DNA of 64,000 nucleotides, from NCBI RefSeq assembly GCF_000143415.4, contig NW_003314275.1, forward strand, positions 1-64,000, in the 5' to 3' direction. The position numbers and the translations under genes are program-made. The notes under the pieces were generated by a model. The model did no database searches. It had not been told where the DNA came from and saw only the letters and a list, made by a program, of their open reading frames with translations. This document shows, piece after piece, positions 1,471 to 28,880 of the stretch (its first letter is position 1; the number at the start of each line of letters is the position of its first letter). This stretch comes from Selaginella moellendorffii. Taxonomy: Eukaryota; Plantae; Lycopodiophyta.

Positions 1471-1829
1471 CTTGTCCTCTCCCTCGCTCACGAATGAATG
1501 AAAATTCATTCCCTTGCCTCCTCTACTTGCTCTCGATCACGCCGTTTCAACAACGGCACACGGAGAATGTGGATTGCACAAAGTGGTGCCGCGATCTCGC
1601 CGGATTGCAGCACCGCGGGGTGTCTTTGACCCTAAACGCCTAAACGCGCCTAAATCCTAAACTCTCTGCGGTTCAAAAGCATCCGAGCGGGCCTCACCAG
1701 CTTTGCTCGGTTGCAAAAGCACATCCCACGCACCAAGTAAGCTTAAGTTCTCACACTGTTTCTATTGTTTCCAGAAGAATTCAGTAAATTTGAACAACAA
1801 TCTACCAAAGTCAAACCTCTTTGCCAATG

Positions 1830-4800
1830 GCAGGCCAAGACAACTCCATACATGGCTCTGGGATAGGAGAAGCCAGCCACGATGCCCCTCACTCCCTGCG
1901 CACAGGTCTGGCACAGCAAGTCTCCAGGCCGGGCATTTGTGTTGGCCCTTGCGCGCTGCACCTCACCGCCAGGACGCCACAGAAATCCCTGCCTGGAGCT
2001 GCTAACCGCCACTAAGAGTCTGGGAGCTAGCTCGGCATCTCCACACAACAGTTTCTCTGGCGTCTCGGGTGGCCCAGCTCCTCTGACTCAGGTCCAGCAC
2101 AGCAAGTGCCCCACAAAGGCTTTTTGGCCGCCTCTGGTTGCTGCCTCGGCACCACCAAAGGATCTCCAAAAAGCCTAAGGGGATTGCTCCCTGCTGTTGA
2201 GAGCACGCGCCCCACCCAGACATCACCACAGAACTGTTGTGATCGACCAGAATCCGCCGTAGGAGACACAATTGCAACTGCAACTACAAATGCCCGCCTC
2301 TGCTCCTCCAGCATCCTCTCCACCGTCAGATCTCCCGATCTAACGGCCCACGTGGTCCAAGCCTCAATCGTAAAAAATTCTAAGTCCCAGCACTTAGATT
2401 TTTTAATGGGCTATGGAGGAGAAAGATGCAAGGAGCAGCCACGGCAGAGCATTCTGTCTTGAGCACGCCACAGCAGCAAGCCAACGGCAAGCCAAGACAA
2501 CCCCAAGCATGATTCTGGATTCAGAGAAACCAGCCACGATGCCCCTCTCTCCCCTCGCTAGGGTCTGGCACAGCAAGTCTCCAGGCCAGGCATTTGCGTT
2601 GGCCCCTGTGCGCCGCACTTCGCTGCCACAGCGCCACAAAAAATCCCTGCCCGGAGCCGCTCACCGCCACTAAGAGTCTGGGAGCTAGCTTGGATTCTCA
2701 ACACAGCAATCTTTTTGGTGTTTCCCGCGGCCCAGCTCCCCTGAATCGGGTCTGGCACAGCTAACTCCCCACAAAGGCTTTTTGCCCCTTTTGGTCCAGT
2801 GCCTTGGCACCACCAAGAGATCATCAAAAATGCCAAGGGAGCTGCTCCCTGCCACACAGAGCGCCCACCCCGCCCAGAGATCACCATAAAAACGCTGTGC
2901 TTCACCAAAATCTGCCATGGGAGAAGCCTTTGCAACAGCAATTGCAAAGGGCCACTCACGCTGCCCTCTCTTCCCTCCTCCACCATTGGATCATACAGAT
3001 CTAACGGCTCAAACGCTCAGCCTTTGAGTTGCCAAAAATTTCTAAGTCCTAGCACTTGGTTTTTGGCAATGGAGAGGAAGCTACGTGAGCATCGCAGCTA
3101 CGTCTTGAGCACGCCACGGCCCAAGTCACCACAGCCAGCTGCTCCAGCAGCAGCAGCAGCCGCCGACGCAGGCAGCACCAGCCACTGCAACAGCCCGCGG
3201 CCTGCCAACACCAGCAGCTGCCGCGGCTGCTGCCCCAGCCGGCCAGCCAGCAGTGCCACGGCCGGCCTCCAGCGACCGCCACAGCGAGCACTTGGGCCAG
3301 CACTCGCCGCCCAAAGCGCCAGCTCTGTGGCTAGCCGTGGCCCAGCCCGTTAGCACCGCGTCCCGGCCAGCCGCTGCTCAGCAGCACCACCAGCGCTGCC
3401 CAGCAGCGCCCTGCTGCACCAGGCACCTCTGCATGATGCTGCGCGCCGCCCAGCAGCGCCAAGCACCGCTGCACGCCGTTCAGGGCCGCCACGCGCCGCC
3501 CGGAGCTGCTGCGCCCTGCCTAGCGCCTCCCTGCACTGCCTGGTGCCAACAGCAAACCAAGAAAACTCCATACGTGACTCTGGGACAGGAGAAGCCAGCC
3601 ATGATGCCCCTCACTCCCTGCATACAGGTCTGGCACAGCAAGTCCCCAGGCCGGGCATTTCCGTAGGTCCCTGTGCGTGCTGCACCTCACCGCCAGGACG
3701 CCACAGAAATCCCTGCCTGGAGCTGCTAACCGCCACTAAGAGTCTGGGAGCTAGCTCGGCATCTCCACACAACAGCTTCTCTGACGTCTTGTGCGGCCCA
3801 GCCCCTCCGACTCAGGTCCGGCACAGCAAATGCCCCACAAAGGCTTTTTGGCCCCCCTTGGTTGCTGCCTCGGCACCACCAAGGGATCTCCAAAAATGCT
3901 AAGGGGATTGCTCCCTGCTGTTGAGAGCACCCACACCACCCAGACATCACCACAAAGCTGTTGTGATCCACTAGAATCTGCCGTGGGGGACACAATTGCA
4001 ACTGCAATTGCAAATGCCCACCTCTGCTCCTCCAGCATCCTCTCCACCGTCAGATCTCCCGATCTAACGGTCCACGTGGTCCAAGCCTGAATCGTAAAAA
4101 TTCTAAGTCCCAGCACTTAGAATTTTTTCTGGGCTATGGAGGAGAAAGATGCAAGGAGCAGCCACGGCAGGGCATTCTGTCTTGACCACGCCACAACATC
4201 AAGCCAGGACAACTCCAAGCATGGTTCTGGATTCAGAGAAACCAGCCATGTGCCCTTCTCTCCCCTCGCCAGGGTCTGGCACAGCAAGTCCCCAAGCCAG
4301 GCATTTGCGTTGGCCCCTGTGTGCCACACCTCGCTGCCACAGCGCCACAAAAAATCCCTGCCTGGAGCTGCTCACTGCCACTAAGAGTCTGGGAACTAGC
4401 TTGGCTTCTCGACACAACAATCTCTTTGGTGTTTCCTGCGGCCCAGCTCCCCTGAATCGTGTCTGGCATAGCAAACTCCCCACAAAGGCTTTTTGCCCCT
4501 TTTGGTCCAGTGCCTTGGCACCACCAAGAGATCATCAAAAATGCCAAGGGAGCTGCTCCCTACCACACAGAGCCCCAGAGATCACCATAGCAATTGCTGT
4601 GCCTCACCAAAATCCACCATGGGAGAAGCCTTTGCAACAACAACAGCCATTGCAAAGGCCGACTCACGCTCCCCTCTCCTCTCTCCTCCACCGTCGGATC
4701 GCACAAATCCAACGGCTCAAACGCTCAGCCTTTGAGTTGCCAGAAATTTCTAAGTCCTAGCACTTGGTTTTTGGCAATGGTAGAGGAAGCTACGGGAGCA

Positions 4801-6100
4801 TGGCCGCTGCGTCTTGAGCACGCCACAGCCCAGGCCACCACAGCCAGCTGCTCCAGCAGCAACAGCCGCTGACGCAGGCAGCGCCAGCCATCGCAGCAGC
4901 CCGCGGCTTGCGAACACCAACAGCTGCCGCGGCTGCTGCGCCAGCCGGCCAGCCAGCTGTGCCACGGCCGGCCTCCAGCGACCGCCACAGTGAGCACTTG
5001 GGCCAGCACTCGCCGCCCAAAGCGCCAGCTCTGTGGCTCGTCGTGGCCCAGCCCATCAGCACCGCGTCCCGGCCAGCCGCTGCCCAGCAGCACCACCAGC
5101 GCTGCCCAGCAGTGCTCCACCGCGCCAAGCACGACCGCACGCTGCTCAGGGCCGCCACGTGCTGCCCAGAGCCGCTGCGTGCTGCCTAGTGCCGCCCCGT
5201 GCCGCCCAGTGCTGCTCACGTGTGCCCAGCACCGCCCAGTGATGTGCTGTACCGCCAGCGACGCGCGGTACTGCACAGTGACGTGCGGCACTGCCCAGCG
5301 ACGCGCGGTACTGCACAGTGACGCACGGCACTGCCCAGCGACACGCAGTACTTCCAGAGACACGCGGTACAGTCCAGTGCCGCCCAGCGGCTCCAGGCCG
5401 GGCATTTACGTAGGCCCCTATGCGCTGCACCTCACTGCCAAGACGCCACAAAAATCCCTGCCTGGAGCCACTAAGAGTCTTGGAGCTAGCTTGGCATCTC
5501 CACACAACAGCTTTTCTGGCACCTGGTGCGGCCCAGCTCCCCCGACTCAGGTCCGGCATAGCAAATGCCCCACAAAGGCTTTTTGGCCCCCCTCGGCTGC
5601 TGCTTCGGCACCACCAAGGGATTTCCAAAAATGCTAAGGGGACTGCTCCCTGCTGTTGAGAGCACCCGTGCCACCCAGACATCACCACAAAGCTGCTGTG
5701 ATCTCTGGCACGATGCCCCTCACTCCCCTCGCACGGGTCTGGCACAGCATGTCTCCAGGCTGGGCATTCACACTGGCCTCTGCGCGCTGCGTTCTGCCAC
5801 CAGAGCGCCACAAAAGATCCCCACCTGGAGCTGCTCACGGCCACTAAGAGTTTGGGAGCTAGCTTGACATCTCCACTCTGCAGTCTTTTCGACGTCTAGC
5901 GCAGCCCAGCTCCCCTGACCTGGGTATGGCACAGCAAATCCCTCACAAAGGCTTTTTGCGCCCCTTTGGTATGTTGCCTTGGCACCACCAAAGGATCACC
6001 AAAGATGCCAATGGGAATGCTCCTTGCCACTCAGAGCACCCAAGCTGCCTAGACACTGCCACAACGCTGCCAAAAATCCAATCTGCCATGGATCCCCTGC
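1830..6100 (+). repeat. GC-rich complex satellite-like payload inside the PLE
   Basis: GCCACTAAGAGT-GGAGCTAGC motif recurs near 2008, 2666, 3732, 4377, 5467 and 5840; higher-order duplication ~1830-3560 vs ~3560-5190 (period ~1.72 kb); CAG/GCC-rich stretches. Confidence 0.85.
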
Positions 6101-6349
6101 AATCACTAGTGCTAGCACTGGCCCTGCAACTGCAGAGCCAAGCACTATGCCGATGGCACGGGCTCTCTCACCACCTCTGGTGCCAGATCCCTTGCAATCG
6201 CCACCCAGGCCAGCCCCTGCCACTGGAACAGAGCAGCGAGCCCTCTCGCCTTAACGCTCTCCAGGACCTGGCCCAGCGCAGCAGCCACCGTCACCTCTGC
6301 ACCTGGCTCTGCTCTGCGTGTCCATGGCACCACGCTCAACACTGTCCCC

Positions 6350-7033
6350 ACAGACTCGACGAGTGCCTCGACACAACCAACAAATCGCCCTTCCATCTAC
6401 GGAGGTACACGAGCAGGCCTTGAACGATGGCTCCGAGGATATGGCACGCTTCGTCCCTCGATCAAGATCACCTCGGTGATCCTGCTCGAGGAGTTGGATA
6501 TCCTCGATATCCACTTCTTCAAAGGCCCTCACTTTGAAGAGACACGCTGCCTCGACTCGTCCACGTTCCAGAAGCCCCTCAACGCCTACCAGTACCTCCC
6601 CTGGACGTCGGTTCACCCATGGCACCAGAAAGTGGCATTTATCCGCAGCGAGCTCCGGAGATACCTCCTCCGTGAGAGCACGGCCCATGGATCTCATGCC
6701 ATGCGCATGCGGTTCTACCACCGCCTCTGTGTCCGGGGACACCCGATCTCCTTCCTCCAACACTGCCTCTCTAGCATCTCCTCTGACCAGCGACATGAAG
6801 CTCTCCTTGCACGCTCGCGCCGCTCTAGCGACGCTTGTCGACGGACCCCCCTCGCCTTTAAGCTCCCCTACACGCTTCACAGCACGCAGCTAGGCTTGGG
6901 GGACATCCTAAACCCTAAACAGGTGATGGATGAAGCTCCCGCAGACACACTCCCCTGAGTGATCACGTGCTGGAGATGCCTCCCGAATCCCGGTTCGTTC
7001 CTGGTCATGGCTAAACTCGCTTTGCGAGCTTAG
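6350..7033 (+). pseudogene. PLE reverse transcriptase C-terminal fragment with the catalytic YTDD deleted
   Basis: Same sequence as 10350-11065 but with a 32-bp deletion between AGGTACAC direct repeats at ~6410. Confidence 0.85.
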
Positions 7034-13449: not shown

Positions 13450-13542
13450 GTGGATTGCACAAAGTGGTGCTGCAATCTCGCCGGATTGCAGCACCGCGGG
13501 GTGTCTTTGACCCTAAACGCCTAAACGCGCCTAAATCCTAAA
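13450..13542 (+). mobile_element. PLE unit 5, ~93-bp 3' tail only
   Basis: Matches 1569-1661 with two substitutions. Confidence 0.88.
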
Positions 13543-13608
13543 CCCTAAACCCTAAACCCTAAACCCTAAACCCTAAACCCTAAACCCTAAAACCCTAAAC
13601 CCTAAACC
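13543..13608 (+). repeat. Short telomeric tract
   Basis: (CCCTAAA)n followed by GGTTTTAGGG. Confidence 0.9.
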
Positions 13609-13617
13609 GGTTTTAGG

Positions 13618-15936
13618 GCCAGGCACTATGCCGATGGCACGGGCTCTCTCACCACCTCTGGTGCCGGATCCCTTGCAATCGCCACCCAGGCCAGCCCCTG
13701 CCACTGGAACAGAGCAGCGAGCCCTCTCGCCTTAACGCTCTCCAGGACCTGGCCCAGCGCAGCAACCACCGTCACCTCTGCACCTGGCTCTGCTCTGCGT
13801 GTCCATGGCACCACGCTCAACACTGTCCCCACAGACTCGACGAGTGCCTCGACACAACCAACAAATCGCCCTTCCATCTACGGAGGCACACAGATGACGG
13901 AGTGAGCACTTGGACAGGTACACGAGCAGGCCTTGAACGATGGCTCCGAGGATATGGCACGCTTCGTCCCTCGATCAAGATCACCTCGGTGATCCTGCTC
14001 GAGGAGTTGGATATCCTCGATATCCACTTCTTCAAAGGCCCTCACTTTGAAGAGACACGCTGCCTCGACTCGTCCACGTTCCAGAAGCCCCTCAACGCCT
14101 ACCAGTACCTCCCCTGGACGTCGGTTCACCCATGGCACCAGAAAGTGGCATTTATCCGCAGCGAGCTCCGGAGATACCTCCTCCGTGAGAGCACGGCCCA
14201 TGGATTCCATGCCATGCGCATGCGGTTCTACCACCGCCTCTGTGTCCAGGGACACCCGATCTCCTTCCTCCAACACTGCCTCTCTAGCATCTCCTCTGAC
14301 CAGCGACATGAAGCTCTCCTTGCACGCTCGCGCCGCTCTAGCGACGCTTGTCGACGGACCCCCCTCGCCTTTAAGCTCCCCTACACGCTGCACAGCACGC
14401 AGCTAGGCTTGGGGGACATCCTAAACCCTAAACAGGTGATGGATGAAGCTCCCGCAGACACACTCCCCTGAGTGATCACGTGCTGGAGATGCCTCCCGAA
14501 CCCCGGTTCGTTCCTGGTCAGGGCTAAACTCGCTTTGCGAGCTTAGCCACATCTTTTACTACGCTTTGCAAGAGACGGAAGCATATGATTGCATCCTTCT
14601 CTGCGTAACCAATGACCTTCAGGGTCTGGCCGATGGACTCTAGGTATGTCCCAGTCACCTCTGGTCGTCCCCCACCGGTCAACGCCCGGTCAACGCGCAG
14701 TCTACTGTCCAAACAGGAATATTCCCGAATATTCCCTGACAGTCAGATTGTTGACCGAGTCAACGAGGCCTACACCATTCGATTCTGCACCCCTTTCCAA
14801 GTTTGACTACGTTGGTCTCATCTCCTTACGATGGATACCACACCTTGGAAAGCTTGCGAATCTCATAATGATGCCATGCGACGACGTCGACGTCACACAC
14901 GCCGACACCTCGCAGGAAAAGGACCTTTCTGCATGACCAAAAGACCTCGGGTACGTACCAGTCACTCCAGGCCACCTCCCTTTCGAGTCAACGCCCGGTC
15001 AACGCGGAGTCAACGGTCAGAACGGAATATTCCCCAATATTCCGACTGTATCCCTGTTGACCGAGTAAAAACGGCATATACCGTTGGATTCCGCTCTTCC
15101 TTCTGATCGTGAATATGTGAGTTTCAACTCTGAACTCCTCACACGATTCGTTGAAAAGCGTGTATTCCGTTAAAACGGTACCGCTCCTTCGACATCGGCG
15201 ATGCACGCCGACAACTCGCGGGATGGCTCTCCCCTGCACCACCGCTGGACTTCTGGTATGTATGAGTGACCTCAGGAGCCCCACCATCCCAGTCCACACA
15301 CGGTCAACGCGGGGTCAACGGTCAACGACGGAATATTCCCAGAATATTCCCTGCAAAGTGGACCACGTTTTTCGCCGCCGGGTACGTACAAGTGACACAA
15401 GCATTGTGGACGTAACGCATGCATCATATCATGCCGCGTTTACAAGTTATCTTGTGTCAAAGGTATGTCACCCGCCGGCCAAACGCTTACTGTCTTCGGC
15501 AATTAGCCGAAGTCATTCTCCGCGACTACCACTGCTGTGGAGTAACCAACACCAGCTTTGCTACGTTCGCACCCTCGCGAGCCAACGCTGCCACGCCACT
15601 TCGCATGGCCGCCACACGGACTCGCGCCACGTGACAGAGCCAAAATATAAGTAGAGTCGGCACCGAGCTAGGGTTAGGGTAGACACTAGACGACTACACC
15701 CGGCTGATGAGTCCCAAAAAGGACGAAACCGGTCTCGGGTTGTCTCTTGTCCTCTCCCTCGCTCACGAATGAATGAAAATTCATTCCCTCGCCTCCTCTA
15801 CTTGCTCTCGATCACGCCGTTTCGACAACGGCACACGGAGAATGTGGATTGCACAAAGTGGTGCCGCGATCTCGCCGGATTGCAGCACCGCGGGGTGTCT
15901 TTGACCCTAAACGCCTAAACGCGCCTAAATCCTAAA
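13618..15936 (+). mobile_element. PLE unit 6, 5'-truncated; RT fragment ~13830-14546 (HTDD variant)
   Basis: Starts at the equivalent of ~6137; ORF 13902-14471; same 3' seed. Confidence 0.88.
15688..15745 (+). ncRNA. Hammerhead ribozyme copy 5
   Basis: CTGATGA at 15704, identical core. Confidence 0.9.
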
Positions 15937-16073
15937 CCCTAAACCCTAAAACCGGCTAAACCCTAAACCCTAAACCCTAAACCCTAAACCTAAACCCTAA
16001 ACCCTAAACCCTAAACCCTAAACCCTAAACCCTAAACCCTAAACCCTAAACCCTAAATCCTAAACCCTAAACC
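15937..16073 (+). repeat. Interstitial telomeric tract capping the LINE
   Basis: (CCCTAAA)n with an ACCGGCTAAA variant. Confidence 0.95.
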
Positions 16074-16074
16074 A

Positions 16075-17502
16075 GTTGAAGCCTTCCTTGAGGAGGAGCA
16101 CGCCCTGCCAGACAAGAGAACAGAGTCTCGGGCGTACCAGCACCAGGAGGTTGACACCCCGGAGCGAGTGGCAAAAGCCCAGTCGAGAGTGAGGAAGACT
16201 CGGGGCTGCGGAAAGGTGGTAGAAGCGCTGCACTCCTCGGACGGGAACAGTGATGCTAACAAGGAGTACACCTCACATAAAGTGAACGAGGGAACACATG
16301 GTCAGGCCGAAGAGCACAAGGTGGCAGCAGTAGGGGAAGGTGGAAGTGACTTGGTCCACGACGACACGAGAGGAAAGGCCGTCCCTGTCAAGCTGGCTGA
16401 GACTCTGCAAAGAGCAGTAGCAGAGAAGGAAGAGGAACTCCGCAAGAAGGCACTGATTGCTGTTTTCAGGGGGAAGTTCCCAACAGGTCGCATGGCTAAC
16501 GATTGGATCAATGCAACGCTGGGCCAGGGAATCCTCATGAAGAAGATGCTGCCGCATGGGAAGGGCTGCTACACAGTTGTCTTTGAGACAGAGGAGGCAC
16601 GGTCTCAGGCGGAGGCCATGCATGGCCTCATTGATGAGAATTGGGCGGTGTCATTCCACCCATGGATCCCAAGGTTCACCGCAGAGGACCAGGCTCGTCT
16701 CAAGGGCGGGAGCTTTCCAGTGAACATTGCATTGTGGGACGTTCCCATGGAAATGCGGATCACACCGGTGATACAGGAGCTGGTTGAAGGAAGTATTGGC
16801 CAGATAGCGGCCGGCCTCGACACTGTAGAAGCAGAGGGTGTGCTAGGTCCCATCCGTCTCAAAGTTTTCGTGTCAGCCCCGGCTGAAATCCCGACAGAGA
16901 TCGCAGTGCTGGGCCAGTATATCAGGATCCAAACGGAGAACTCAGAACCTAGATGCAACTTTTGCCAGTGCGCTGGACACCGGGAGGAGGCCTGCTCAGT
17001 CAAGCGGAACAGGTTGGCATCCCAGAAGCCGTTTGAGTTACCTGCAGAGCAGGAGCGGATCTTGAAGGCACGCCCTCCGGACCAAGCTCCCCACATTCGC
17101 TTCCCGGTCGCCCCACCACTCTTGGGCTCATCCTCACAGCCCAAACTGTTCGAGGGACCTATTACGGATGTCGAAGGAGATGGCTTCCAGCCGGTCCTCC
17201 CTCGAACAGTAGGAATGGCGGTCAGGTGGATTCCCCCTAAGCGGGAATTAAGTCCCACAGAGGCGGGAGACTGGCTGATGTGCCGCGGGAACACAGCCTT
17301 CCCAGAGGTTGTCACTATTGGAGACTACCACACACGCATGGAGAGTGCTATCACTGAGTGGACGGGCTTTGCGAAGTACACTGTCCGAGGCTTCTCCTGG
17401 ACGAAGCACAGGGGGAAGATGACTGCGGTGTGGACCATCTCCACAGAATGGAGGGCGAGACCCCGTAACTCCTCACTTTCTTGGAAGTACGTGGCTCCAT
17501 GA
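16075..17502 (+). CDS. LINE ORF1 (DUF4283/RRM-like region + CCHC zinc knuckle), 5'-incomplete
   Basis: Frame is open back to the telomere junction; GCYTVVFETEE..FHPWIPRF; CNFCQCAGHREEAC; stop overlaps the ORF2 start as ATGA (17499-17502). Confidence 0.85.
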   Translation, partial: VEAFLEEEHALPDKRTESRAYQHQEVDTPERVAKAQSRVRKTRGCGKVVEALHSSDGNSDANKEYTSHKVNEGTHGQAEEHKVAAVGEGGSDLVHDDTRGKAVPVKLAETLQRAVAEKEEELRKKALIAVFRGKFPTGRMANDWINATLGQGILMKKMLPHGKGCYTVVFETEEARSQAEAMHGLIDENWAVSFHPWIPRFTAEDQARLKGGSFPVNIALWDVPMEMRITPVIQELVEGSIGQIAAGLDTVEAEGVLGPIRLKVFVSAPAEIPTEIAVLGQYIRIQTENSEPRCNFCQCAGHREEACSVKRNRLASQKPFELPAEQERILKARPPDQAPHIRFPVAPPLLGSSSQPKLFEGPITDVEGDGFQPVLPRTVGMAVRWIPPKRELSPTEAGDWLMCRGNTAFPEVVTIGDYHTRMESAITEWTGFAKYTVRGFSWTKHRGKMTAVWTISTEWRARPRNSSLSWKYVAP

Positions 17503-20500
17503 CAACTCTCACGCTCGTCACCTGGAACTGCCGGGGACTCAGCTGGACCGGCAGTCGACTCAACAAAAGGGCGCAGCTCAAGTCCCACATCCGAGAGATC
17601 AGCTTAGAAGGAGATATCGACATCCTATGCTTGCAAGAGCACAAAATGACTGTGGCCCCAGACTACACCTTTGGAATGAGGGGACGGCTCTGGTGGAACC
17701 CGGCCACGCAAGCAGTGGCCAGACCAGGAGGGGGCACAGCAGTGGTAGTCTCAACCAAATGGTCTGCTCAGGTACGAAACCACCTTGTTCTCGTCCCAGG
17801 AAAGGCTCAATTGCTTGTCCTTCACCTCCACTTTGGACGGGTGGGGATAATCAACGTCTATGCACCAACGAAGAAAGGGAGACGTGCAGAATTCTGGCTG
17901 AGTGTGTTACAGTCTGCCCAGGGGCAAGCAGATGAATGGCTGGTCCTGGGAGATTTCAACATGGTCGAGGACGTCTGTGATCGCAGGGGTATGCAGGAAA
18001 CAATTCAGCCACGTGAACAGAAGCAGTGGAGTCAGCTCATGGACATACTGGGGCTCATGGACCTCCAGCATGCTGCGGGATTCGCACCTCATGCTCACCC
18101 TTTTACAAGGCGACAGACAGTATCCTCCCAGTCGAGACTGGACCGGATTTACGCCTCGTCTCGCATACGGCAGGATGGGGGAAGCCTAAAAACGTGGCTG
18201 GGATTTGCCTCCTTCTCAGATCACGACCCCCTCAGATGCGTGATCCAGCTCCAAAGGGACAAAGGGACAGCGGTCCAGCGATCAATCACTAGAGCCACGC
18301 TGCGAGACCCAGTGGCAATTGGGCTTATACACGACGCTCTTGCGCAGAACAAGCTGGGACTGATCCCTGTGCTCTTGTCTTGCTCACAGAAGCTCCGGGC
18401 GCGCCAGAAGGATCTCAAAGGGGTGGTGATGAAGGACCTTAGACTGGCCAGGAAGAAGGTCGCAGCTGCACACAGGATGTTGCTGAACACGCAAGATGAG
18501 CTCAAGTGGCAAACAATACTGGATGAACGTGAAGCCGAGCTACGTGACATGGAGTACGCTGCATGGAGCAAGGGCGTTCGGGCCATGGAAGATGGATGGG
18601 CCCTGAATGAACGCCTTCTCAACAAGGCTTTCTTTAGGGGAATCAGGCCAGTGAAGGACTCTCCTCCCATTCTAGGACTGAAGCACAGTGACGGGCGAGT
18701 CATCGAGGACCAACAGGGGATGCAACAGCTCGCCCAGGAGTTTTACCAACTTCTATATACGGCCCAGCAGTGGACTCCAGAGAGGGAAAGGGCGGCGGTG
18801 GAAGTGCTTGCGTCCCTTCCCCAGCGAGTCCCCCATGAGTGGCACGACTCACTGAAGACGGACTTCACACTGGAGGAGCTTCGGGAAGCGCTCGGGAAGC
18901 TCAGCAACGACAAGCAGCCAGGTATCGATGGCCTCTTGCCCATTTTCTTCGAGGAGCACTGGGAGACCATAGGCCCGCTGCTGCTACAAGCATGGTGGGA
19001 TGCTCAACGTGATGGGACCTTGCCTCGCGAGATCCTTGAGGGCCAGATTGCGCTTATTCCAAAGAGGGGGGACCTGCAGGAGCTGAAGAATTGGAGGCCA
19101 ATCACCATGCTCAACACGTCCTACAAGGTCTATGCCAAAGCAATGACCCTCAAGCTCCAAGCTGTCATGCCGCTGATCATCCGGGAGCAGCAGACAGGGT
19201 TTGTTCCAGGGCGGCAAATCGCAGAAAACATCTGGACGTACCTGCTGGCTCAGAGATGGGCAGAGATCTCTAACCAACAAACTGCAGCATGGCTTTTGGA
19301 CTTCGAGAAGGCCTACGATCGGGTGGACTGGAGGTTCCTAGAGGAGTGCATGAACACGATCGGCATCCCGAGAGAGATGGTCACTAGGATCTCGTTACTA
19401 TACCGAGGAGCCACAAGCAGAGTCACAATCAATGGCGAGACGGGACCGAGTTTCCAGCTGGGACGTTCAATACGCCAAGGGTGTCCACTAGCACCCTATC
19501 TTTTTCTGATTGTGGCTGAGGCCCTGGGCACGTTTCTAGCGGAAGGCGGACGCATTAAAGGACTCACACTGCCGGCTGCGAGACAGCAACTTCCGGGAAC
19601 CACAAGGGTGTCTCGGGAACTCCTTGATGGTGCTTTTGCGGACGACACTGCCTTGTTCCTACTTGCGACTAAGGAGAACATGGATGCAGCTAAGAAGGCG
19701 CTGGAGACGTTCAACCTCGCGGCTGGTGCAGCAATTAACTGGAACAAATCAGTGGGCATAAATTGGGGGCAACCAGGCATCGAATCTTGGGGGCAGGACA
19801 TTGGCTTCCAGTGGCTCAAACCAGGAGAAGACGCTAGGTACCTGGGGATCCAGGTTGGTACTCGGTTCAGTGCAGCACTTCAGGATGACACCTTGCTCCG
19901 ACGGGTACGAACGTCAATCCAGAAGTGGGCTCCCCGGAAACTCGGCTTGCCAGCGAGAGTGGTAGTCGCTAGGAGCATCATTCTGCCTGGCATCTGGTAC
20001 CACCTCTCCATCTGGCCTGTTCCAGAACGCACTCTTAGAAAGGTACGCACGATGGTCCGTCAGTATTTGTGGCGGGGCGCTCTGGTCACAGGGAGGAGCA
20101 TGGCCAAGGTCGCGTGGCAATCTACAGCACGTCCGCGAGTCTTGGGAGGACTTGGAGTAATCGATCCGAGTGACATGGCGAAGGCGCTACGGTACAAAAT
20201 CCTCCTCATGGGCCTTCAACCAGGTAATCAACCTTGGAGACTCATGTTTAGGCAGAACTTGTTGGCAATCCGGCCCAAGCACAACACTGCAAGACCGTGG
20301 GAAGAAGATCCACGTTGGCTCTTTGCTGAGGGGCCGAAGCAAGTAGTCAAGGGCGGCACTCTAGTCCAGGGGCTTCTCCGGTTATGGAGCGCGTTTCCAG
20401 TCAGTAGGGAATTGCCAGGGCGAGCGGAGGACTGGCTGAACCAGCCCCTGTTCTTCAACGACCTCTTCAAACTGGATGATAGGACATTGGGCAGGGAGGA

Positions 20501-22001
20501 CCACTACACAATCTGGAGAAAGCTACATAGCGCAGGCTTCCGAACTCTCAAGCAGCTAGTGCGGGTTCTGGACAAGGACAGGAGGAAGACTACGAGGCAT
20601 ATGCAGGTCTTTAACCCGGGACGGTGGAGGAAAGTCCACCTTGATCTTCTTCGCATTATCAGAGCAGTGAGTGAGGCGAAGCAGGGGCAGCTCTGGCCTA
20701 GGCGTTGTCTCAAATCTGGAGACTTTGTGGCTCTGCAACGGGACGTGGAGTCAGACAGGGAACGAGTTAGCTTGGGGGCCTGGACACGGGCGTTTACGGC
20801 CCCAACACCAGCTTGGGAGGACAGGGATGTGGAGGTATGGTTCGTTGTGTCTCCAGACCAAAATGTTGGGCGTCCTTTTCGAGTCTTGAGAGGCGACATG
20901 CTGTTGCCAGCAGGGGACGAACAGGTCATGCCGATGGTGACGGATGACGAGGTCAAGGGTAGGATTCGAGTAATACGACAGGCTCCGAAACAATCGGTGG
21001 TGGTTCAATCGTTGGCTGCACTAGAAGGGGAAGGCATTCTTAGATGGTGGCGACAGCAGCTCATCGAGGATCTGGATTGGGACCCCGCAGCATGGAAACG
21101 AGGAGCGAGGAGCTTCTTCTCCTTCGGCGTCAAGGAAGCAAGGGATGGTCTCTTGACCAGCAGGGAGGAGGCCCGAGGGGAGATCCCCAAGCTCTGGAAG
21201 AAATGGATCGAGCAAGGAGTTGAAGCAAATCAGGTGGTGGGCAACACGCTTGCATTCTGGAAACTACCGGTACAGGAGAAAGTCAAGGCCACCTCTTGGT
21301 TGGTGGCAAATAACGGGCTGCCGGTAGGGCAGCGGTTCCAGGAAGAAGCATGCCGACGGTGCAAGGAGTGTGGCGAGTTGGAGACAGCGCAACATGTCCT
21401 ATGGGAATGCGACGTGGCGAGAGAAGTTTGGCGACAGATCTTCAAGGCGACGCAGGAACTCGGAGACATTCCAGAGTTTGAGGCTCGGAGTGGGGATATC
21501 CTCCACTGGTTTGAGGGAGCCAGAGGCCCAGCCATTGGTCCAGCTTGGAGGCGTATTCGCTGCTATGGACGGCACCGATGGAACATGCGAGTCCGGTGGG
21601 ACGTGACAGGGGCTGAAGTTGGGATGTCCATCTGGGAGGCGTTGGGCCAAGAGTGCTGGTCCATTTGGAGGGCAACAGGACTGCAGGCACTTTGGGAGGC
21701 ACGGAACCACTGTCGCTTTGATGGGCAACAAGCGAGAATATCGGCAGTGGTGGCATCATGGTGGAGACTCACTCTCGCAGCGGTGCGTCTTCACTACACC
21801 ATCCTGAAAGAGCGGGTGAAACCGAGGCAGCTCGAGGAGTGGAGATCTAGGTGGCTCCCATGCTTCGGCAAATTGGGAGGTGGCGAGATTCGCTGGCAAT
21901 GGCGCCCCCCAGACTCTGTTCTAAGGTCAGCTCATGGGGGAGACTTGGACATCGACATGATTCGCTCGAGACGACCACGTCCACTTCTACTCCAGGACTA
22001 G
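17499..22001 (+). CDS. LINE ORF2: APE endonuclease, reverse transcriptase, C-terminal zinc finger (1500 aa)
   Basis: TWNCRGL, LQEHK, GDFN, SRLDRIY, SDH; PGIDG, WRPITMLN, DFEKAYD, RQGCPLAP, FADD; CKECGELETAQHVLWEC. Confidence 0.96.
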   Translation: MTTLTLVTWNCRGLSWTGSRLNKRAQLKSHIREISLEGDIDILCLQEHKMTVAPDYTFGMRGRLWWNPATQAVARPGGGTAVVVSTKWSAQVRNHLVLVPGKAQLLVLHLHFGRVGIINVYAPTKKGRRAEFWLSVLQSAQGQADEWLVLGDFNMVEDVCDRRGMQETIQPREQKQWSQLMDILGLMDLQHAAGFAPHAHPFTRRQTVSSQSRLDRIYASSRIRQDGGSLKTWLGFASFSDHDPLRCVIQLQRDKGTAVQRSITRATLRDPVAIGLIHDALAQNKLGLIPVLLSCSQKLRARQKDLKGVVMKDLRLARKKVAAAHRMLLNTQDELKWQTILDEREAELRDMEYAAWSKGVRAMEDGWALNERLLNKAFFRGIRPVKDSPPILGLKHSDGRVIEDQQGMQQLAQEFYQLLYTAQQWTPERERAAVEVLASLPQRVPHEWHDSLKTDFTLEELREALGKLSNDKQPGIDGLLPIFFEEHWETIGPLLLQAWWDAQRDGTLPREILEGQIALIPKRGDLQELKNWRPITMLNTSYKVYAKAMTLKLQAVMPLIIREQQTGFVPGRQIAENIWTYLLAQRWAEISNQQTAAWLLDFEKAYDRVDWRFLEECMNTIGIPREMVTRISLLYRGATSRVTINGETGPSFQLGRSIRQGCPLAPYLFLIVAEALGTFLAEGGRIKGLTLPAARQQLPGTTRVSRELLDGAFADDTALFLLATKENMDAAKKALETFNLAAGAAINWNKSVGINWGQPGIESWGQDIGFQWLKPGEDARYLGIQVGTRFSAALQDDTLLRRVRTSIQKWAPRKLGLPARVVVARSIILPGIWYHLSIWPVPERTLRKVRTMVRQYLWRGALVTGRSMAKVAWQSTARPRVLGGLGVIDPSDMAKALRYKILLMGLQPGNQPWRLMFRQNLLAIRPKHNTARPWEEDPRWLFAEGPKQVVKGGTLVQGLLRLWSAFPVSRELPGRAEDWLNQPLFFNDLFKLDDRTLGREDHYTIWRKLHSAGFRTLKQLVRVLDKDRRKTTRHMQVFNPGRWRKVHLDLLRIIRAVSEAKQGQLWPRRCLKSGDFVALQRDVESDRERVSLGAWTRAFTAPTPAWEDRDVEVWFVVSPDQNVGRPFRVLRGDMLLPAGDEQVMPMVTDDEVKGRIRVIRQAPKQSVVVQSLAALEGEGILRWWRQQLIEDLDWDPAAWKRGARSFFSFGVKEARDGLLTSREEARGEIPKLWKKWIEQGVEANQVVGNTLAFWKLPVQEKVKATSWLVANNGLPVGQRFQEEACRRCKECGELETAQHVLWECDVAREVWRQIFKATQELGDIPEFEARSGDILHWFEGARGPAIGPAWRRIRCYGRHRWNMRVRWDVTGAEVGMSIWEALGQECWSIWRATGLQALWEARNHCRFDGQQARISAVVASWWRLTLAAVRLHYTILKERVKPRQLEEWRSRWLPCFGKLGGGEIRWQWRPPDSVLRSAHGGDLDIDMIRSRRPRPLLLQD

Positions 22002-22109
22002 GTCTAGCTGCGGCATATGAGGATCACGTAGAGTAGCTCATGGAGAGGGCGGCACGCCCATTTTTTGTATTAGTCCCATTGGGACATGGGGAATGTACAT
22101 ACACGTTCA

Positions 22110-22173
22110 GCGATCTCGCCGGATTGCAGCACCGCGGGGTGTCTTTGACCCTAAACGCCTAAACGCGCCTAAA
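22110..22173 (+). mobile_element. 64-bp PLE 3' tail fused to the LINE 3' UTR
   Basis: GCGATCTCGCCGGATTGCAGCACCGCGGGGTGTCTTTGACCCTAAACGCCTAAACGCGCCTAAA, identical to 1591-1654. Confidence 0.92.
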
Positions 22174-22227
22174 CCCTAAACCCTAAACCCTAAACCCTAA
22201 ACCGGTAAACCCTAAACCCTAAACCCA
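22174..22227 (+). repeat. Innermost telomeric tract
   Basis: (CCCTAAA)n with an ACCGGTAAA variant. Confidence 0.92.
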
Positions 22228-24303
22228 AAGTTCCCAACAGGTCGCATGGCTAACGATTGGATCAATGCAACGCTAGGCCAGGGAATCCTCATGAAGATGA
22301 TGCTGCCACATGGAAAGGGCTGCTACACAGTTGTCTTTGAGACAGAGGAGGCACGGTCTCAGGCGGAGGCCATGCATGGCCTCATTGATGAGAATTGGGC
22401 GGTGTCATTCCACCCATGGATCCCAAGGTTCACCGCAGAGGACCAGGCTCGTCTCAAGGGCGGGAGCTTTCCAGTGAACATTGCATTGTGGGATGTTCCC
22501 ATGGAAATGCGGATCACACTGGTGATACAGGAGCTGGTTGAAGGAAGTATCGGCCAGATAGCGGCCGGCCTCGACACTGTAGAAGCAGAGGGTGTTCTAG
22601 GTCCCATCCGCCTCAAAGTTTTCGTGTCAGCCCCGGCAGAGATTGCAGTGCTGGGCCAGTATATCAGGATCCAAACGGAGAACTCAGAACCTAGATGCAA
22701 CTTTTGTCAGCGTGCTGGACACCGGGAGGAGGCCTGCTCAGTCAAGCGGAACAGGTTGGCATCCCAGAAGCCGTTTGAGTTACCTGTAGAGCAGGAGCGG
22801 ATCTTGAAGGCACGCCCTCTGGACCAAGCTCCCCACATTCGCTTCCCGGTCGCCCCACCACTCTTGGGCTCATCCTCACAGCCCAAACTGTTCGAGGGAC
22901 CTATTACAGATGTCGAAGGAGATGGCTTCCAGCCGGTCCTCCCTCGAACAGTAGGAATGGCGGTCAGGTGGATTCCCCCTAAGCGGGAATTAAGTCCCAC
23001 AGAGGCGGGAGACTGGCTGATGTGCCGCGGGAACACAACCTTCCCAAAGGTCGTCACTATTGGAGACTACCACACACGCATGGAGAGTGCTATCACTGAG
23101 TGGACGGGCTTTGCAAAGTACACTGTCCGAGGCTTCTCCTGGACGAAGCACAGGGGGAAGATGACTGCGGTGTGGACCATCTCCACAGAATGGAGGGCGA
23201 GACCCCGTAACTCCTCACTTTCTTGGAAGTACGTGGCTCCATGACAACTCTCACGCTCGTCACCTGGAACTGTCGGGGACTTAGCTGGACCGGCAGTCGA
23301 CTCAACAAAAGGGCGCAGCTCAAGTCCCACATCCGGGAGATCAGCTTAGAAGGAGATATCGACATCCTATGCTTGCAAGAGCACAAAATGACTGTGGCCC
23401 CAGACTACACCTTTGGAATGAGGGGACGGCTCTGGTGGAACCCGGCCACGCAAGCAGTGGCCAGACCAGGAGGGGGCACAGCAATGGTAGTCTCAACCAA
23501 ATGGTCTGCTCAGGTACGAAACCACCTTGTCCTCGTCCCAGGAAAGGCTCAATTGCTTGTCCTTCACGTCCACTTTGGACGGGTGGGGATAATCAACGTC
23601 TATGCACCAACGAAGAAAGGGAGACGTGCAGAATTCTGGCTGAGTGTGTTACAGTCTGCCCAGGGGCAAGCAGATGAATGGCTGGTCCTGGGAGATTTCA
23701 ACATGGTCGAGGACGTCTGTGATCGCAGGGGTATGCAGGAAACAATTCAGCCACGTGAACAGAAGCAGTGGAGTCAGCTCATGGACATACTGGGGCTCAT
23801 GGACCTTCAGCATGCTGCGGGATTCGCACCTCACGCTCACCCTTCTACAAGGCGACAGACAGTATCCTCCCAGTCGAGACTGGACCGGATTTACGCCTCA
23901 TCTCGCATACGGCAGGATGGGGGAAGCCTTAAAACGTGGCTGGGATTTGCCTCCTTCTCAGATCACGACCCCCTCAGATGCGTGATCCAGCTCCAAAGGG
24001 ACAAAGGGACAGCGGTCCAGCGATCAATCACTAGAGCCACGCTGGGAGACCCGGTGGCGATTGGGCTTATACACGACGCTCTTGCGCAGAACAAGCTGGG
24101 GCTGATCCCTGTGCTCTTGTCTTGCTCACAGAAGCTCCGGGCGCGCCAGAAGGATCTCAAAGGGGCGGTGATGAAGGACCTTAGACTGGCCAGGAAGAAG
24201 GTCGCAGCAGCACACAGGATGTTGCTGAACACGCAAGATGAGTTCAAGTGGCAAACAATACTGGATGAACGTGAAGCAGAGCTACGTGACATGGAGTACG
24301 CTG
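22228..24303 (+). mobile_element. Second LINE copy, truncated at both ends (partial ORF1 22246-23244; APE part of ORF2 23241-24303)
   Basis: Near-identical to 16474-18561 with scattered SNPs and a 12-bp in-frame deletion (PAEIPTEIAV to PAEIAV). Confidence 0.93.
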
Positions 24304-25109
24304 TTCCGTGAACTGCTCACTGTTCCAAAAGACTATACCACCGCTTGCAGGCTTCGGCAAGACCAAGTGTAGACAATCTGTGCTATCTCCACCCTGTCTC
24401 AAGTCCGTGCAGCGCCTCGTCACTGGGGGCTGTGGGCTGGATCGGGGCCTCACACTTGAGGAACGAGCTGGTGAAGCTGGGAGTGAAGCTCTGGGCTTGT
24501 TTGTCAGGTCCGACAAGCATCTGTGGGCAAACTTCAGTGTCCAAAGAGGCAGCTCCTTGTTCAGTCCTAGGACCACGGCTGAACGATCTGGCTCTCTGGA
24601 GATCTCTTGGCTTGGTTGTGCCTCTGAATGGGGGATTGTGAACTCACCTTCTAGTGAGGCTTCCATGTTGAGCCTGCAGGACAGAAGTGCATCGTCCTGT
24701 TCCCCTCTGTTTTTGGACGTTCTGGGTGGGGCAGACTTGAGTTCTCCTGTCCCACGTCCTGGCTCCGACCATGACCTTGTAGCAGTCCTTGTGGAAGCCG
24801 AATGCTGAGGCCCCTACCTTGCGCTCCTCAACCTTGAGAGCTTAGATTGCTAGGCATGGATGCCGTGACTCCCTTGTGGCTGTTCTCTATATTGCTAGCA
24901 AGAGAGTTAGTACACAGCAGAAACAAAGAAAGGGGAACAATGCTGCCCTGAATCTCAAGGCAGATGCCCCTGCCGACAGTAACAAGTGCGAGGAGATTGC
25001 ATGCTCTCCCCTGTGCGTTCTTCTACCTCTAGCTACACTGTTGATCACGGTAGCCATGGTGCTAGGTGCCTTTCACCACCGCCTCCCCTAAACTCGTCCA
25101 ACATTAGGG

Positions 25110-25840
25110 TTTTCCGTGCATGGAGGTTGGGTTCAAGTCCCAACCCTCTAATGCTTGGGTTCAAGTCCCAACTCATTAGGGTGTGGTAATGGTTTGGAAT
25201 ATAAGGATGCTTATTTTTCGATGGCCATGGACTCTCAATAAAGAGATTGGCTTGGGCACATTGCCAAGCGGGGAATGCCCTAAAGTTGTGATACATGGTT
25301 AGATTGTTTAGTGTGAAAGTCTGGCATATTTAACTTGAACACTTTGGTACAAGTGGCACTAAGAATGTAGTAAATGAAATGGGGGCATCCAGTCTCAATT
25401 GCTATGAACCCTTGGTTAGAAGGGCTACCTTGGGTGCATTGCCAAGTGTATGCCCTCAGGGTCATGGTCAATAATTTAAAGGTTTGTAAGATTTAGTACT
25501 TATTAGCAAACTTGTTAAAGTGTCAAAGTTAGATTATTAGGTGATCTTACGGTTAAAGAAGAACAAGGTCCTTATGAAGTTAAGGAATAAGCTTCCTAGT
25601 TCAAAGTATTGATTTCAACTATTGGTAATAGTGTGGCTTGGTCAAGGTGACCAAGTGGGAATGACACCTAAGAAAAATAAATTACAACAATACAATAGTA
25701 TTATGAGTTCAAAAAAATAGTTTCTAAGAAAGGACCCATGAGTGGGTTGCAAGGTTGGACCATGGATAAAGTGTATACATAAATATATTGGAGAGACTTA
25801 CTAAGGGTGAACACCTTTTAAACTTAGTAAAGCATAGCCT
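25110..25840 (+). mobile_element. Decayed fragment of the LARD-like (family B) internal region
   Basis: Aligns by eye to 49710-50430 with mostly C>T/G>A changes. Confidence 0.75.
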
Positions 25841-26542
25841 TTAATTACACCAACTTAAATGAGTTAAGATATAATGCAAATGCATTACCAATTTAAACAC
25901 CTTTTGGTCATCATTGATAAAGAAATGACCAACATAGTTAGCCACTCTAATTGCTCTGAATGTTATTCAGCTTACAAAAGTGTAATATGCCTCTACCTGT
26001 AGAAATATAGAGAGAGAAGGTAAAGGCCTCAACCCTTATGAACAAAGAAACCAAACTCGTCAATAAGGTTTAAATAGACTACTGTAAATAAGCAGTTAGA
26101 ATTATTTACAAGGTCATGCCTTTTACCAAAATAAAGAACATCAACAAAGAGGTGGGTGATATGACCAATCAACAGTAGCTGCCCTATAACTAGATATTTC
26201 ACCATTCACACAAAGTGTCAAAGCTAATCTACCCATACTGGCCCAAACAGAAAGATCAGGAAATAGACAATATTAAAGTCATAGATAATGATATCTTAGA
26301 GACTTAATTATCAATGAATAAATCTTATATATGAACATCAAAGTATTCTAAATAAGTTATCATCCGAGAAACCAAAATTATAGTATAAGAACTATCAAGA
26401 TCATCATAATTGAAAAATATAGGATTCATCATTGAACAAAATTCAATAGCTAGTGTATCATTAAAAAAACTCAATGATAAACTTAACAATCAAAGATTGT
26501 AGATAGCATGCTAAACAATTTACCTAAGATAACTCAAACCAA

Positions 26543-28366
26543 CATTTTTAATATCGATCACTAACTCTTCCTTTTGTGAAGTTAACATAGTTATGATTAA
26601 ATTAGTTTTCAAGGAAAAACTCAAAACTCAACCCCTACTAAATAATCTTGTCTAAAACACAATTAATTCAACTTGTCACTCAGCTCGCTTGAATACTAAC
26701 ATAATTGCTAGCTATCAAATGCACTAATGCTAATAACACAAAGCTATAGCCCAAGTATCATCACTATTTACATCGAGACTAATAAAACACAATATCAATC
26801 TTATAGAGAGACATTTCATTTCACTCGAATCTAAATATCAACAATGTCAATGATAAAGCATCACTTCAATGTCATCAATATTAAAACAAAGTTAATAAAA
26901 AGTAAGAGCGAATCACCACTCAAAACTCTTTAGCAACTAAGCTAACCAAAGTCAAAGATACCTTAATTAGTATTCAAGACTAATCCTTTAATAATACTCA
27001 ATTATAAATAACACATCATCAAGGAGTGATTCCCCATATTCAAGACTCAATATAATCTAATACCACGGACTAAATGTAACTAAACGATATCGACAAAAGT
27101 AGAAATCAATATGCCAACATGGAAAAATTATATAAGTTTAACGACACGATCCTTCACAACACTATTCGGTAAAACAAACCCATCACTAATAAATCTTCAT
27201 CAAGTGAAACAAATGTTAATAGTCCTCAATAAAATCTACAAGCAATCACTAGTTGCAAAGCAACTAACAATCACTCTTCAACTTGTCTTCACAAAACCCA
27301 AACACTAAACTCATACTATCAAGTTATATACTTGTTTAATATGAACGTAATATCCCAGGTATCAGATGAAGGTTCATAGATAGACATAGACTAAATGACC
27401 ACTTGAATCCAATCAAACCGCAATAAGCTCACTAATATGTTTAGTCAATTCACCAATAGGTAAAATAAATAATATAATAAATAAAATTGGTAAAAGTAAA
27501 CCTTCCTTATTGGTTAAACATATTGGTGAGTTTATTGCAATTTGATTAAATTTAAGTGGTTATTTAGTTTGTATTTATCTATGAACCTTTATCTCATATT
27601 TGGGGTATTACTGAGTTTAGTGTTTAGATCTTGTGAAAGCAAGTTGAAGAATGATTGTTAGTTATTTTGTAACTAGTGATTTCTTGTAGATTTTGTTGAG
27701 GACTATTAATACTTGCTTCATTTGATGAAGATTTATCAATGATAAGCTTGCTTTATCGGATTGTGTCGTTAGACTTTCATAGTTTTTCTATACTGGCATA
27801 TTGATTCTACCTCTATCAATATCATTTAGTTATGTTTAATTTGTAATATTGAATTACATTGAGTCTTGGATATGGGAAATTACTCTTTGATGATGTGTTA
27901 TCTATAATTGAGTATTGTTAAAGGATTGGTCTTGAATACTAATTAAGGTATCTTTGACTTTGGTTAGCTTAGTTGCTAAAGAGTTTTAAATGGTGATTCA
28001 CTTTTGCTTTCTACTAGCTTTGTTTTAATATTGATGATATTGAAGTGATACCCTGTCATTGACATTATTGATATTTAGATTCAAGTGAAATGAGATGTCT
28101 CTCTATAAGATTGATATTGAGTTTCATTAGTCTTGATACAAATAGTAATGATAATTAGGTTATATCTTTGTGTTATTAACATTGGTGCATTTGATAGTTA
28201 GCAATTATGTTAGTGTTCAAATGAGCGGAGTGGCAAATCGAATTAGTTGTGTTTTAGACAAGATTATTTAGTAGGGGATGAGTTTTGAGCTTTTCCTTGA
28301 AAAATGATTTAGTCGTGACTATATTAACTTTACGAGAGGAAGACTTAGTGATCGATATTAAAGATA
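26543..28366. repeat. Long AT-rich inverted repeat (arms ~26543-27444 and ~27513-28366, spacer ~70 bp)
   Basis: For example, AAAACTCTTTAGCAACTAAGCTAACCAAAGTCAAAGATACCTTAATTAGTATTCAAGAC (~26922) is the reverse complement of ~27928-27987. Confidence 0.9.
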
Positions 28367-28659
28367 TTAGTTCTTTGTTGGATTTAAGTTGGGATACATC
28401 AATCATTGATGATTTCTCTTATGCTTGTTATGAAGTGAGTTATGTTTTACTATAGATAGATTCATGGAGGATCAATTGGTAAACACTTGTTGAGCATAGC
28501 TTCATTGTATTTGGCTTTTGAATTGATTCAAAAATATTTTTCATTAGCTTTGGCATTATAAAGTTTAACTTTTAGTTGTGTTAAAAAGAATATTATGGGT
28601 TGTACCATGATTTCTTCTTTAACATTGAAATTAATTCATGTAAGACTCATGATCATTAT

Positions 28660-28880
28660 TAGGCTAGACATGGCTGAAAACTTGGTCTCGTCTCACCATT
28701 TATCATAACTCTACTTGCAACTCTATAGTACAGTAGTGACATTCTTGAGACCATCTCTTCCGGGATGCTAATCTTGCACATACACTCCTCAAAGAACCTA
28801 TAGTCCACATAATTGTAGGCCTTCTCAAAATCTAGTAACCACACTACAATTTGTTAGTTGGAGATCTCTACCCATCTCTT
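28660..28880 (-). pseudogene. Old LINE RT fragment related to the telomeric LINE
   Basis: WLLDFEKAYNYVDYRFFEECM..SRVMINGETRPSF. Confidence 0.85.

What the first reader, a model, noticed from the sequence alone, without database searches (positions are those of the whole stretch)
21990..22227. Intact LINE ends in the PLE telomere-priming tail instead of poly(A)
Seen: the LINE 3' UTR (..ACACGTTCA) joins directly to the last 64 nt of the PLE (identical to 1591-1654), then telomere repeats, with no A-tail. Three models (inference): (a) the RT primed on PLE RNA and switched template to LINE RNA; (b) the LINE family has captured the tail as a telomere-addressing module; (c) a Tx1-like sequence-specific LINE targets this site in the PLE tail. 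The putative promoter/HHR of upstream unit 6 could also transcribe through the LINE to this tail, giving a Terminon-like composite RNA. ORF2 is the only intact RT in the window.
Basis: partly seen in the sequence, partly recalled or inferred. Interest (0 to 1): 0.85.

Follow-up and report, generated by a model that had tools for sequence, protein, structure and literature searches.

The report
LINE targeting a telomeric retroelement's hairpin
In the spikemoss Selaginella, one jumping gene keeps inserting at a single letter inside the end hairpin of another jumping gene that lengthens chromosome tips, so it only appears to own that telomere-docking tail; this habit is known in frogs and crocodilians, but I found it described for no plant.

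Summary
The junction is real, but the 64-nt tail belongs to the target, not the LINE. Three independent public S. moellendorffii scaffolds hold nine more LINE 3' ends. Counting the window copy, none of the ten has poly(A); nine are followed by the first 17-18 nt of the tail. Two copies sit inside a Penelope-like (PLE) tail, flanked by a 17-18-bp target-site duplication. One full-length copy sits at an unrelated site with its own 16-bp duplication and no tail. Tail variants follow the locus, not the LINE. Model (c) is supported; (a) and (b) are refuted. The window copy is not intact: it lacks about 2.2 kb and its left duplication, replaced by telomere repeats, as in three other copies. The site lies in a hairpin with mirror-image ends; one copy seems inserted in the opposite orientation. 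ORF2 groups with fern and metagenome L1-type relatives; Tx1 membership is untested. The scan already found this on other pieces of this genome; I found no paper on it.

The parts
16074..22109 (+). LINE copy 1, 5'-truncated (last 6036 nt of an about 8.2-kb element); ends at ..ACACGTTCA without poly(A)
   Evidence: 99.5% identical to the TSD-flanked copy in L003
16075..17502 (+). 3' 475 codons of ORF1 (the frame is about 1140 codons in full-length copy L005); no Pfam match
17499..22001 (+). ORF2, 1500 aa, APE endonuclease - RT - zf-RVT; unbroken, excess of silent changes against other copies
22002..22109 (+). 108-nt 3' UTR, no polyadenylation signal, two small predicted terminal stem-loops
   Evidence: prediction only; last 47 nt conserved in the 51%-identical relative
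22110..22127 (+). Right-hand copy of the 17-18-bp target-site duplication GCGATCTCGCCGGATTG(C); the left-hand copy is missing in this locus
22128..22226 (+). Remainder of the resident PLE 3' tail and telomere-type repeats
15904..16073 (+). Telomere-repeat tract capping the truncated LINE 5' end; the next PLE unit's tail sits on it
1585..1614 (+). Uninterrupted target: 30-bp pseudo-palindromic hairpin of the PLE tail (further copies start 6 nt before 8353, 12385, 13348, 13472, 15866)
   Evidence: (z -3.8 and -5.1)
15686..15753 (+). Hammerhead ribozyme of the adjacent PLE unit (also 1411, 8173, 12205, 13168)
   Evidence: Rfam HH9, E 2.7e-7, below the family's gathering score
9926..10990 (+). PLE reading-frame remnant holding the C-terminal part of a Penelope-type RT (also 13827-14471, 6346-6958)
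   Evidence: (PF26215 clusters, score 0.96)
22228..24303 (+). LINE copy 2 (97.6% to copy 1), 5' end capped by telomere repeats, 3' part lost
24301..25113 (-). Inverted pieces of the LINE 5' region (98% over LINE positions 815-1278; 81% over 8-349) fused to copy 2

Best explanation
A young, poly(A)-less L1-type LINE of S. moellendorffii inserts by target-primed reverse transcription at one base in the 3' hairpin of the telomere-attaching, endonuclease-less PLE. Shown from sequence: the insertion point, the 17-18-bp duplication, the true 3' end, tandem re-targeting, and one off-target copy. Inferred: the APE endonuclease nicks the G-rich strand at GATCGC^GGCACC; the freed 3' end, on the centromere side, primes cDNA that grows towards the chromosome tip; the second cut falls 17-18 nt away on the mirror arm of the hairpin. 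The rest of the tail then lies behind the LINE and looks like its own end. In this window the distal part, with the left duplication and 2.2 kb of LINE, was lost and healed with telomere repeats, either because the cDNA never joined the distal fragment or through later erosion. More PLE units were then added on top.
For: L003: PLE..GGTGCC + 18-mer + LINE + 18-mer + rest of tail. L005: the same with 17 bp and a full-length LINE. L004: full-length LINE at a non-PLE site, 16-bp duplication, no tail; the nick site matches the canonical one at 8 of 12 bases, P about 0.003. 9 of 10 3' ends are followed by the 17-18-mer, none by poly(A). All five young 5'-complete copies have the target directly upstream. 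Window and L003 LINEs differ at 15 of 3276 bases but their tails at 2 of 57 (P 0.03), and each tail equals PLE tails of its own locus. Four copies have telomere-capped 5' ends; one of them (L009 9352-9752) is followed by another LINE and not by a tail, so capping does not need the tail. ORF2 differences are mostly silent (18 of 25 against L003).
Against: This locus lacks the left duplication, so its origin is inferred from sister copies. Loci were reached through ORF1-containing gene models, a small and biased sample. No read data. No biochemical test. The off-target copy has a 16-bp duplication without a mirror motif, so the mirror arm is not required for the second cut. The opposite-orientation copy is known from one junction only.
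Confidence: 0.88

Rival explanations
1. Secondary mobilisation: the family is site-specific, but this copy arose when a read-through RNA (LINE plus resident tail and C-rich repeats) annealed to the telomere overhang and was copied by the PLE RT or by ORF2 without the endonuclease, like a PLE unit. This is compatible with the best explanation for the family and differs only for telomere-capped copies.
For: The copy has the same layout as its PLE neighbours: telomere cap, 5'-truncated body, tail, telomere repeats. There is no polyadenylation signal, so read-through is plausible. The LINE lies downstream of the hammerhead, so a LINE-tail RNA would not be cut by it. A terminal 613-nt copy with tail is similar.
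Against: The tail matches local PLE tails and not the tail of the closest LINE copy. Telomere capping also occurs on a copy with no tail (L009 9352-9752) and on copy 2. No RNA evidence.
Confidence: 0.2
2. One reading: the LINE family has captured the tail as its own telomere-addressing 3' end.
For: Six of ten 3' ends continue into the full tail.
Against: The off-target full-length copy has no tail; three ends run into the next LINE after 17-18 nt; the target start is duplicated upstream of 5' ends; tail variants are local.
Confidence: 0.03
3. One reading: a single template switch from PLE RNA to LINE RNA.
For: This locus alone shows no duplication.
Against: The same base is used in copies 0.5-2.4% apart, and in one 14% apart, on three other scaffolds, with different 5' ends and local tail variants.
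Confidence: 0.02
4. Misassembly of this locus in a repetitive chromosome end.
For: Near-identical tandem units; no read check was possible.
Against: The junction recurs in the independent assembly GCA_000143415; 18 runs hold half or more of the sampled words of 19500-22140.
Confidence: 0.04

Closest known systems
Xenopus Tx1L inserting into the DNA transposon Tx1D (PMC1950540, PMC4494074)
   Same: APE-type LINE with one defined insertion site inside another transposon, a harmless multicopy target.
   Different: Host is a land plant; the target is the telomere-docking 3' hairpin of a retroelement; the RT groups with fern and metagenome relatives, apart from the vertebrate sequences in my tree. 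Endonuclease specificity is shown for Tx1L, only inferred here.
Crocodilian Tx1-Mar and Tx1-9_AMi, inserting into Mariner-N4, Harbinger and LTR elements (PMC4494074)
   Same: Preference for a fixed position in another mobile element.
   Different: Animal Tx1 clade; targets are interstitial transposons, not chromosome-end elements.
Endonuclease-less telomeric PLEs of Selaginella and rotifer Terminons (PMC4209133, PMC12477314, PMC6431247; the 2007 and 2017 primary papers were not held)
   Same: This is the target element: hammerhead near the 3' end, C-rich repeats at the end, 5' ends truncated by telomere repeats, head-to-tail arrays.
   Different: The LINE has its own endonuclease and makes duplications; it is a secondary insertion, not a Terminon cargo shown to be co-transcribed.
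TRAS/SART of Bombyx and HeT-A/TART/TAHRE of Drosophila (mostly from memory; PMC1950540 and PMC12477314 mention them)
   Same: LINEs concentrated at chromosome ends in a polar arrangement, 5' end towards the tip, often truncated.
   Different: Those insert in telomere repeats or attach to the end through poly(A); this one targets a 30-bp hairpin of another element and has no poly(A). Telomerase-type repeats still cap the ends here.
'Stringent' plant L1 lineages with a structured 3' end (PMC3472496)
   Same: Conserved 3' terminus with predicted stem-loops.
   Different: No site specificity is reported in the abstract and opening text I read; the structure here is only predicted.
Selaginella PLE-X families targeting 28S rDNA (PMC8557442)
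   Same: Precise-site retrotransposition in the same genus; the authors call it the first plant example for rDNA.
   Different: That is a PLE without endonuclease targeting rDNA; here a LINE targets a PLE.

Membership tests
L1 group non-LTR retrotransposon (APE type) | ORF1 plus ORF2 with APE endonuclease, RT and C-terminal zinc motif | tested here: met
   (human L1 ORF2p E 4e-50, R2 E 8e-16)
L1 group non-LTR retrotransposon (APE type) | Target-site duplications and variable 5' truncation | tested here: met
   16-18-bp duplications in L003, L004, L005; truncations at many positions
Canonical (relaxed) L1 | 3' poly(A) tail and dispersed insertion at T-rich sites | tested here: not met
   0 of 10 3' ends have poly(A); 9 of 10 share one target
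Tx1 clade | RT phylogeny within Tx1 | tested here: inconclusive
   No labelled Tx1 reference was available. FastTree puts ORF2 with Adiantum and metagenome relatives (0.95), inside a group with Riccia and Chara (0.80-0.94), apart from vertebrate rows
Tx1 clade | Found in animals (as defined in PMC4494074) | tested here: not met
   Host is S. moellendorffii
Site-specific LINE (works like Tx1L) | Independent insertions at one base of a multicopy target | tested here: met
Site-specific LINE (works like Tx1L) | Endonuclease nicks the target in vitro | not testable with these tools
   needs recombinant protein
Terminon / EN-less telomeric PLE (for the LINE) | Penelope-type RT, no endonuclease, no duplication, own hammerhead plus C-rich 3' end | tested here: not met
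   L1-type RT with APE domain and duplications; no hammerhead in the LINE
Terminon / EN-less telomeric PLE (for the target units) | Hammerhead near 3' end, telomere-complementary end, Penelope RT, 5' ends capped by telomere repeats | tested here: met
   only the C-terminal RT part is present in this window
Terminon-like composite RNA | One transcript from the PLE unit through the LINE to the tail | not tested

The most novel reading that the evidence does not exclude
Because its target exists almost only in chromosome-end arrays and its cDNA always grows on the G-rich strand towards the tip, this LINE acts as a de facto end-extending element: incomplete insertions drop the distal DNA and are capped by telomerase, and read-through RNAs carrying the borrowed tail may dock on telomeres without the endonuclease. 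It would be a plant snapshot of how a site-specific LINE can turn into a HeT-A/TART-like telomeric element by way of another element's docking tail.
Probability: 0.25. Interest if true: 0.8.

Novelty: new variant of a known kind. Interest (0 to 1): 0.55.

Why it matters
Precise-site LINEs are well known in animals, but my searches found none described for a land-plant L1, and none with a Penelope-like element as target. The 30-bp target with mirror-image ends gives a direct biochemical test of how an APE LINE makes its second-strand cut and sets duplication length, an open step of the reaction. The telomere-capped copies bear on how LINEs come to live at, and perhaps extend, chromosome ends. 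A plant APE retrotransposon with a defined target is also a candidate for targeted insertion tools. The narrower claim in the title, a LINE that owns a telomere-priming tail, does not hold.

Tried and rejected
A DNA pattern of the LINE end found nothing in metagenome contigs. Full-length ORF2 search found no close relative; ORF1 and C-terminal queries gave the Selaginella loci. L006 (71% relative) is cut before its 3' end and is uninformative. L011 and L012 (JGI and Adiantum relatives) gave no readable ends. The apparently best hits P0035 and P0036 score high only through repeated RT stretches. Gladyshev and Arkhipova 2007, Christensen 2000 and Arkhipova 2017 were not held; Repbase was not available, so a prior database note cannot be excluded. 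The motif count was designed from the sites themselves and is not a test. One reconstruction line was mis-indexed; one search gives the correct L004 duplication. I considered the shared 18-mer at the end of distant relatives L001/L002 as a shared target and rejected it for L002/L010, where it lies inside the duplication-bracketed insert.

Full report
Setting. The window begins at a chromosome end: C-rich telomere repeats at 1-158, then a head-to-tail array to 16073 of units that share a 3' part and are separated by telomere tracts. Five units carry a hammerhead, and three carry the C-terminal part of a Penelope-type RT. ORF1 pieces match S. moellendorffii gene models at 85-100%. Telomere-associated, endonuclease-less PLEs with hammerheads are described for this species (PMC4209133; PMC12477314).

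Observation. Bases 22110-22173 are identical to 1591-1654 and follow the LINE 3' UTR with no A-run. Six other tails in the window are preceded by PLE sequence. The junction falls inside the 5' arm of a stable hairpin at 1585-1614, so the LINE splits a structure that belongs to the PLE. ORF2 is complete and is the only unbroken RT in the window. The element is not intact: ORF1 is open from the telomere tract with no start codon, and full-length copies are about 2.2 kb longer.

How my reading changed. I started at 45% template switch, 30% captured tail, 20% site-specific insertion. Earlier scan notes named the species and argued for site-specific insertion. I treated that as a lead and tested it on public scaffolds of assembly GCA_000143415, reached through ORF1-containing gene models.

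Test 1, duplications. In L003 a LINE 99.5% identical to the window copy lies between two copies of the 18-mer GCGATCTCGCCGGATTGC, with PLE sequence upstream and the rest of the tail downstream. In L005 a full-length copy has the same with 17 bp. That is a classical target-site duplication inside a PLE tail.

Test 2, a copy without the tail. In L004 a full-length copy sits at an unrelated site, flanked by the 16-bp duplication GCGAACTATATCTGTT, and ends at ..ACACGTTCA with neither tail nor poly(A). The LINE therefore ends before the tail. The inferred nick site there matches the usual one at 8 of 12 bases (binomial P about 0.003), and the duplication starts with the same four bases.

Test 3, tally. 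Of ten 3' ends, none has poly(A), six continue into the whole tail, three continue for 17-18 nt into the 5' end of another copy, and one is the off-target site. All five young copies that keep the 5' end have the target 17-18-mer directly upstream, followed by a few variable bases.

Test 4, tail variants. The window and L003 LINEs differ at 15 of 3276 bases, their tails at 2 of 57 (P 0.03). Each tail equals PLE tails in its own array. The tail was resident.

Mechanism. By established TPRT chemistry, the endonuclease nicks the G-rich strand at the left edge of the duplication, and the centromere-side 3' end primes cDNA towards the tip. The right edge of the duplication is the mirror position on the other hairpin arm (GATCGC^GGCACC against GATTGC^AGCACC). 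One LINE 5' end in L005 (25477-25502) adjoins the mirror 18-mer in the opposite orientation, which suggests either arm can be used; only one junction is visible. The off-target copy has no mirror motif, so symmetry is not needed for the second cut. With no polyadenylation signal, the RNA is probably recognised by its 3' stem-loops and may read a few bases into the target; this is inference. ORF2 differences between copies are mostly silent, which fits recent activity.

Why this copy has no left duplication. Its 5' end is capped by telomere repeats. So are copy 2 (22228) and two copies in L009, with one to two bases of overlap with the repeat. One of these has no tail behind it, so capping does not depend on the tail. 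The simplest reading is loss of distal DNA, during insertion or later, then telomerase healing of a G-strand end and further PLE additions. Attachment of a LINE-plus-tail read-through RNA to the telomere is not excluded for this copy (about 20%).

Relatives. ORF2 resembles human L1 ORF2p far more than R2. An RT tree of 175 sequences groups it with a Selaginella paralogue, Adiantum and metagenome elements (support 0.95), within a group containing Riccia and Chara, apart from angiosperm L1s and vertebrate rows. No labelled Tx1 was available, so Tx1 membership is open; rows under 300 aligned residues were left out. A 30%-identical relative (L002/L010) also lacks poly(A) and has a 17-bp duplication, so the tail-less end may be a lineage trait.

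Known systems. LINEs that target other transposons are known: Tx1L in Tx1D, and crocodilian Tx1-Mar (PMC1950540, PMC4494074). Six literature searches found no plant L1 with a fixed site and no LINE targeting a PLE, but three key papers and Repbase were not available.

Limits. The sample is about ten junctions on four sequences.

Verdict. Real; a site-specific plant LINE parasitising the 3' hairpin of a telomeric PLE. New variant of a known kind, already noted several times by this scan on other pieces of the genome. Interest 0.55.

Noticed in passing
L004 9908-9946: The off-target full-length copy carries at its 5' end the last 11 nt of another LINE copy plus the 18-bp target. Either its RNA began in the upstream member of a tandem pair (a HeT-A-like 5' tag) or the RT jumped to a second RNA that read 18 nt into the tail.
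   Followed up: partly
L005 25430-26240: A LINE 5' end adjoins the mirror 18-mer of the hairpin in the opposite orientation; the element is then interrupted and its other end was not fetched.
   Followed up: partly
L005 3083-3100, L009 9776-9795, window 25100-25113 (-): The LINE 5' end begins with an A-run and one telomere-like unit resembling the plant telo-box promoter element (from memory), preceded by variable GC-rich extra bases.
   Followed up: no
L009 9293-9352: Two LINE 3' fragments are joined head-to-head through a telomere tract, as expected from a telomere-to-break fusion.
   Followed up: no
L009 18510 (-): A LINE 3' fragment is joined at its 5' side to the interior of a PLE unit with no duplication; a solo LTR with a 5-bp duplication lies inside the fragment.
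   Followed up: no
window 22228-25113: Copy 2 is fused to inverted pieces of the LINE 5' region from two subfamilies (98% and 81%).
   Followed up: partly
window 61140-63278 (-): A decayed relative (51% amino-acid identity) keeps the 3'-terminal motif but is followed by neither the tail nor poly(A); it lies among gypsy elements.
   Followed up: partly
L010 103-126: A distant relative has a tRNA-like 5' addition just inside its duplication (resembles a tRNA-Trp 5' half, from memory; ARAGORN finds no whole gene).
   Followed up: partly
window 13450-13608; L005 1855, 2389; L003 3952: Very short PLE additions of only 67-120 nt (hairpin plus tail) between telomere tracts, without the hammerhead; the 13450 copy has a perfectly paired hairpin.
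   Followed up: no
window 1666-6100: The long PLE unit has about 4.4 kb of internally repeated, apparently non-coding DNA upstream of the RT remnant.
   Followed up: no
window 26000-28700: AT-rich (29% GC) block with long degenerate inverted repeats, unlike the rest of the window.
   Followed up: no
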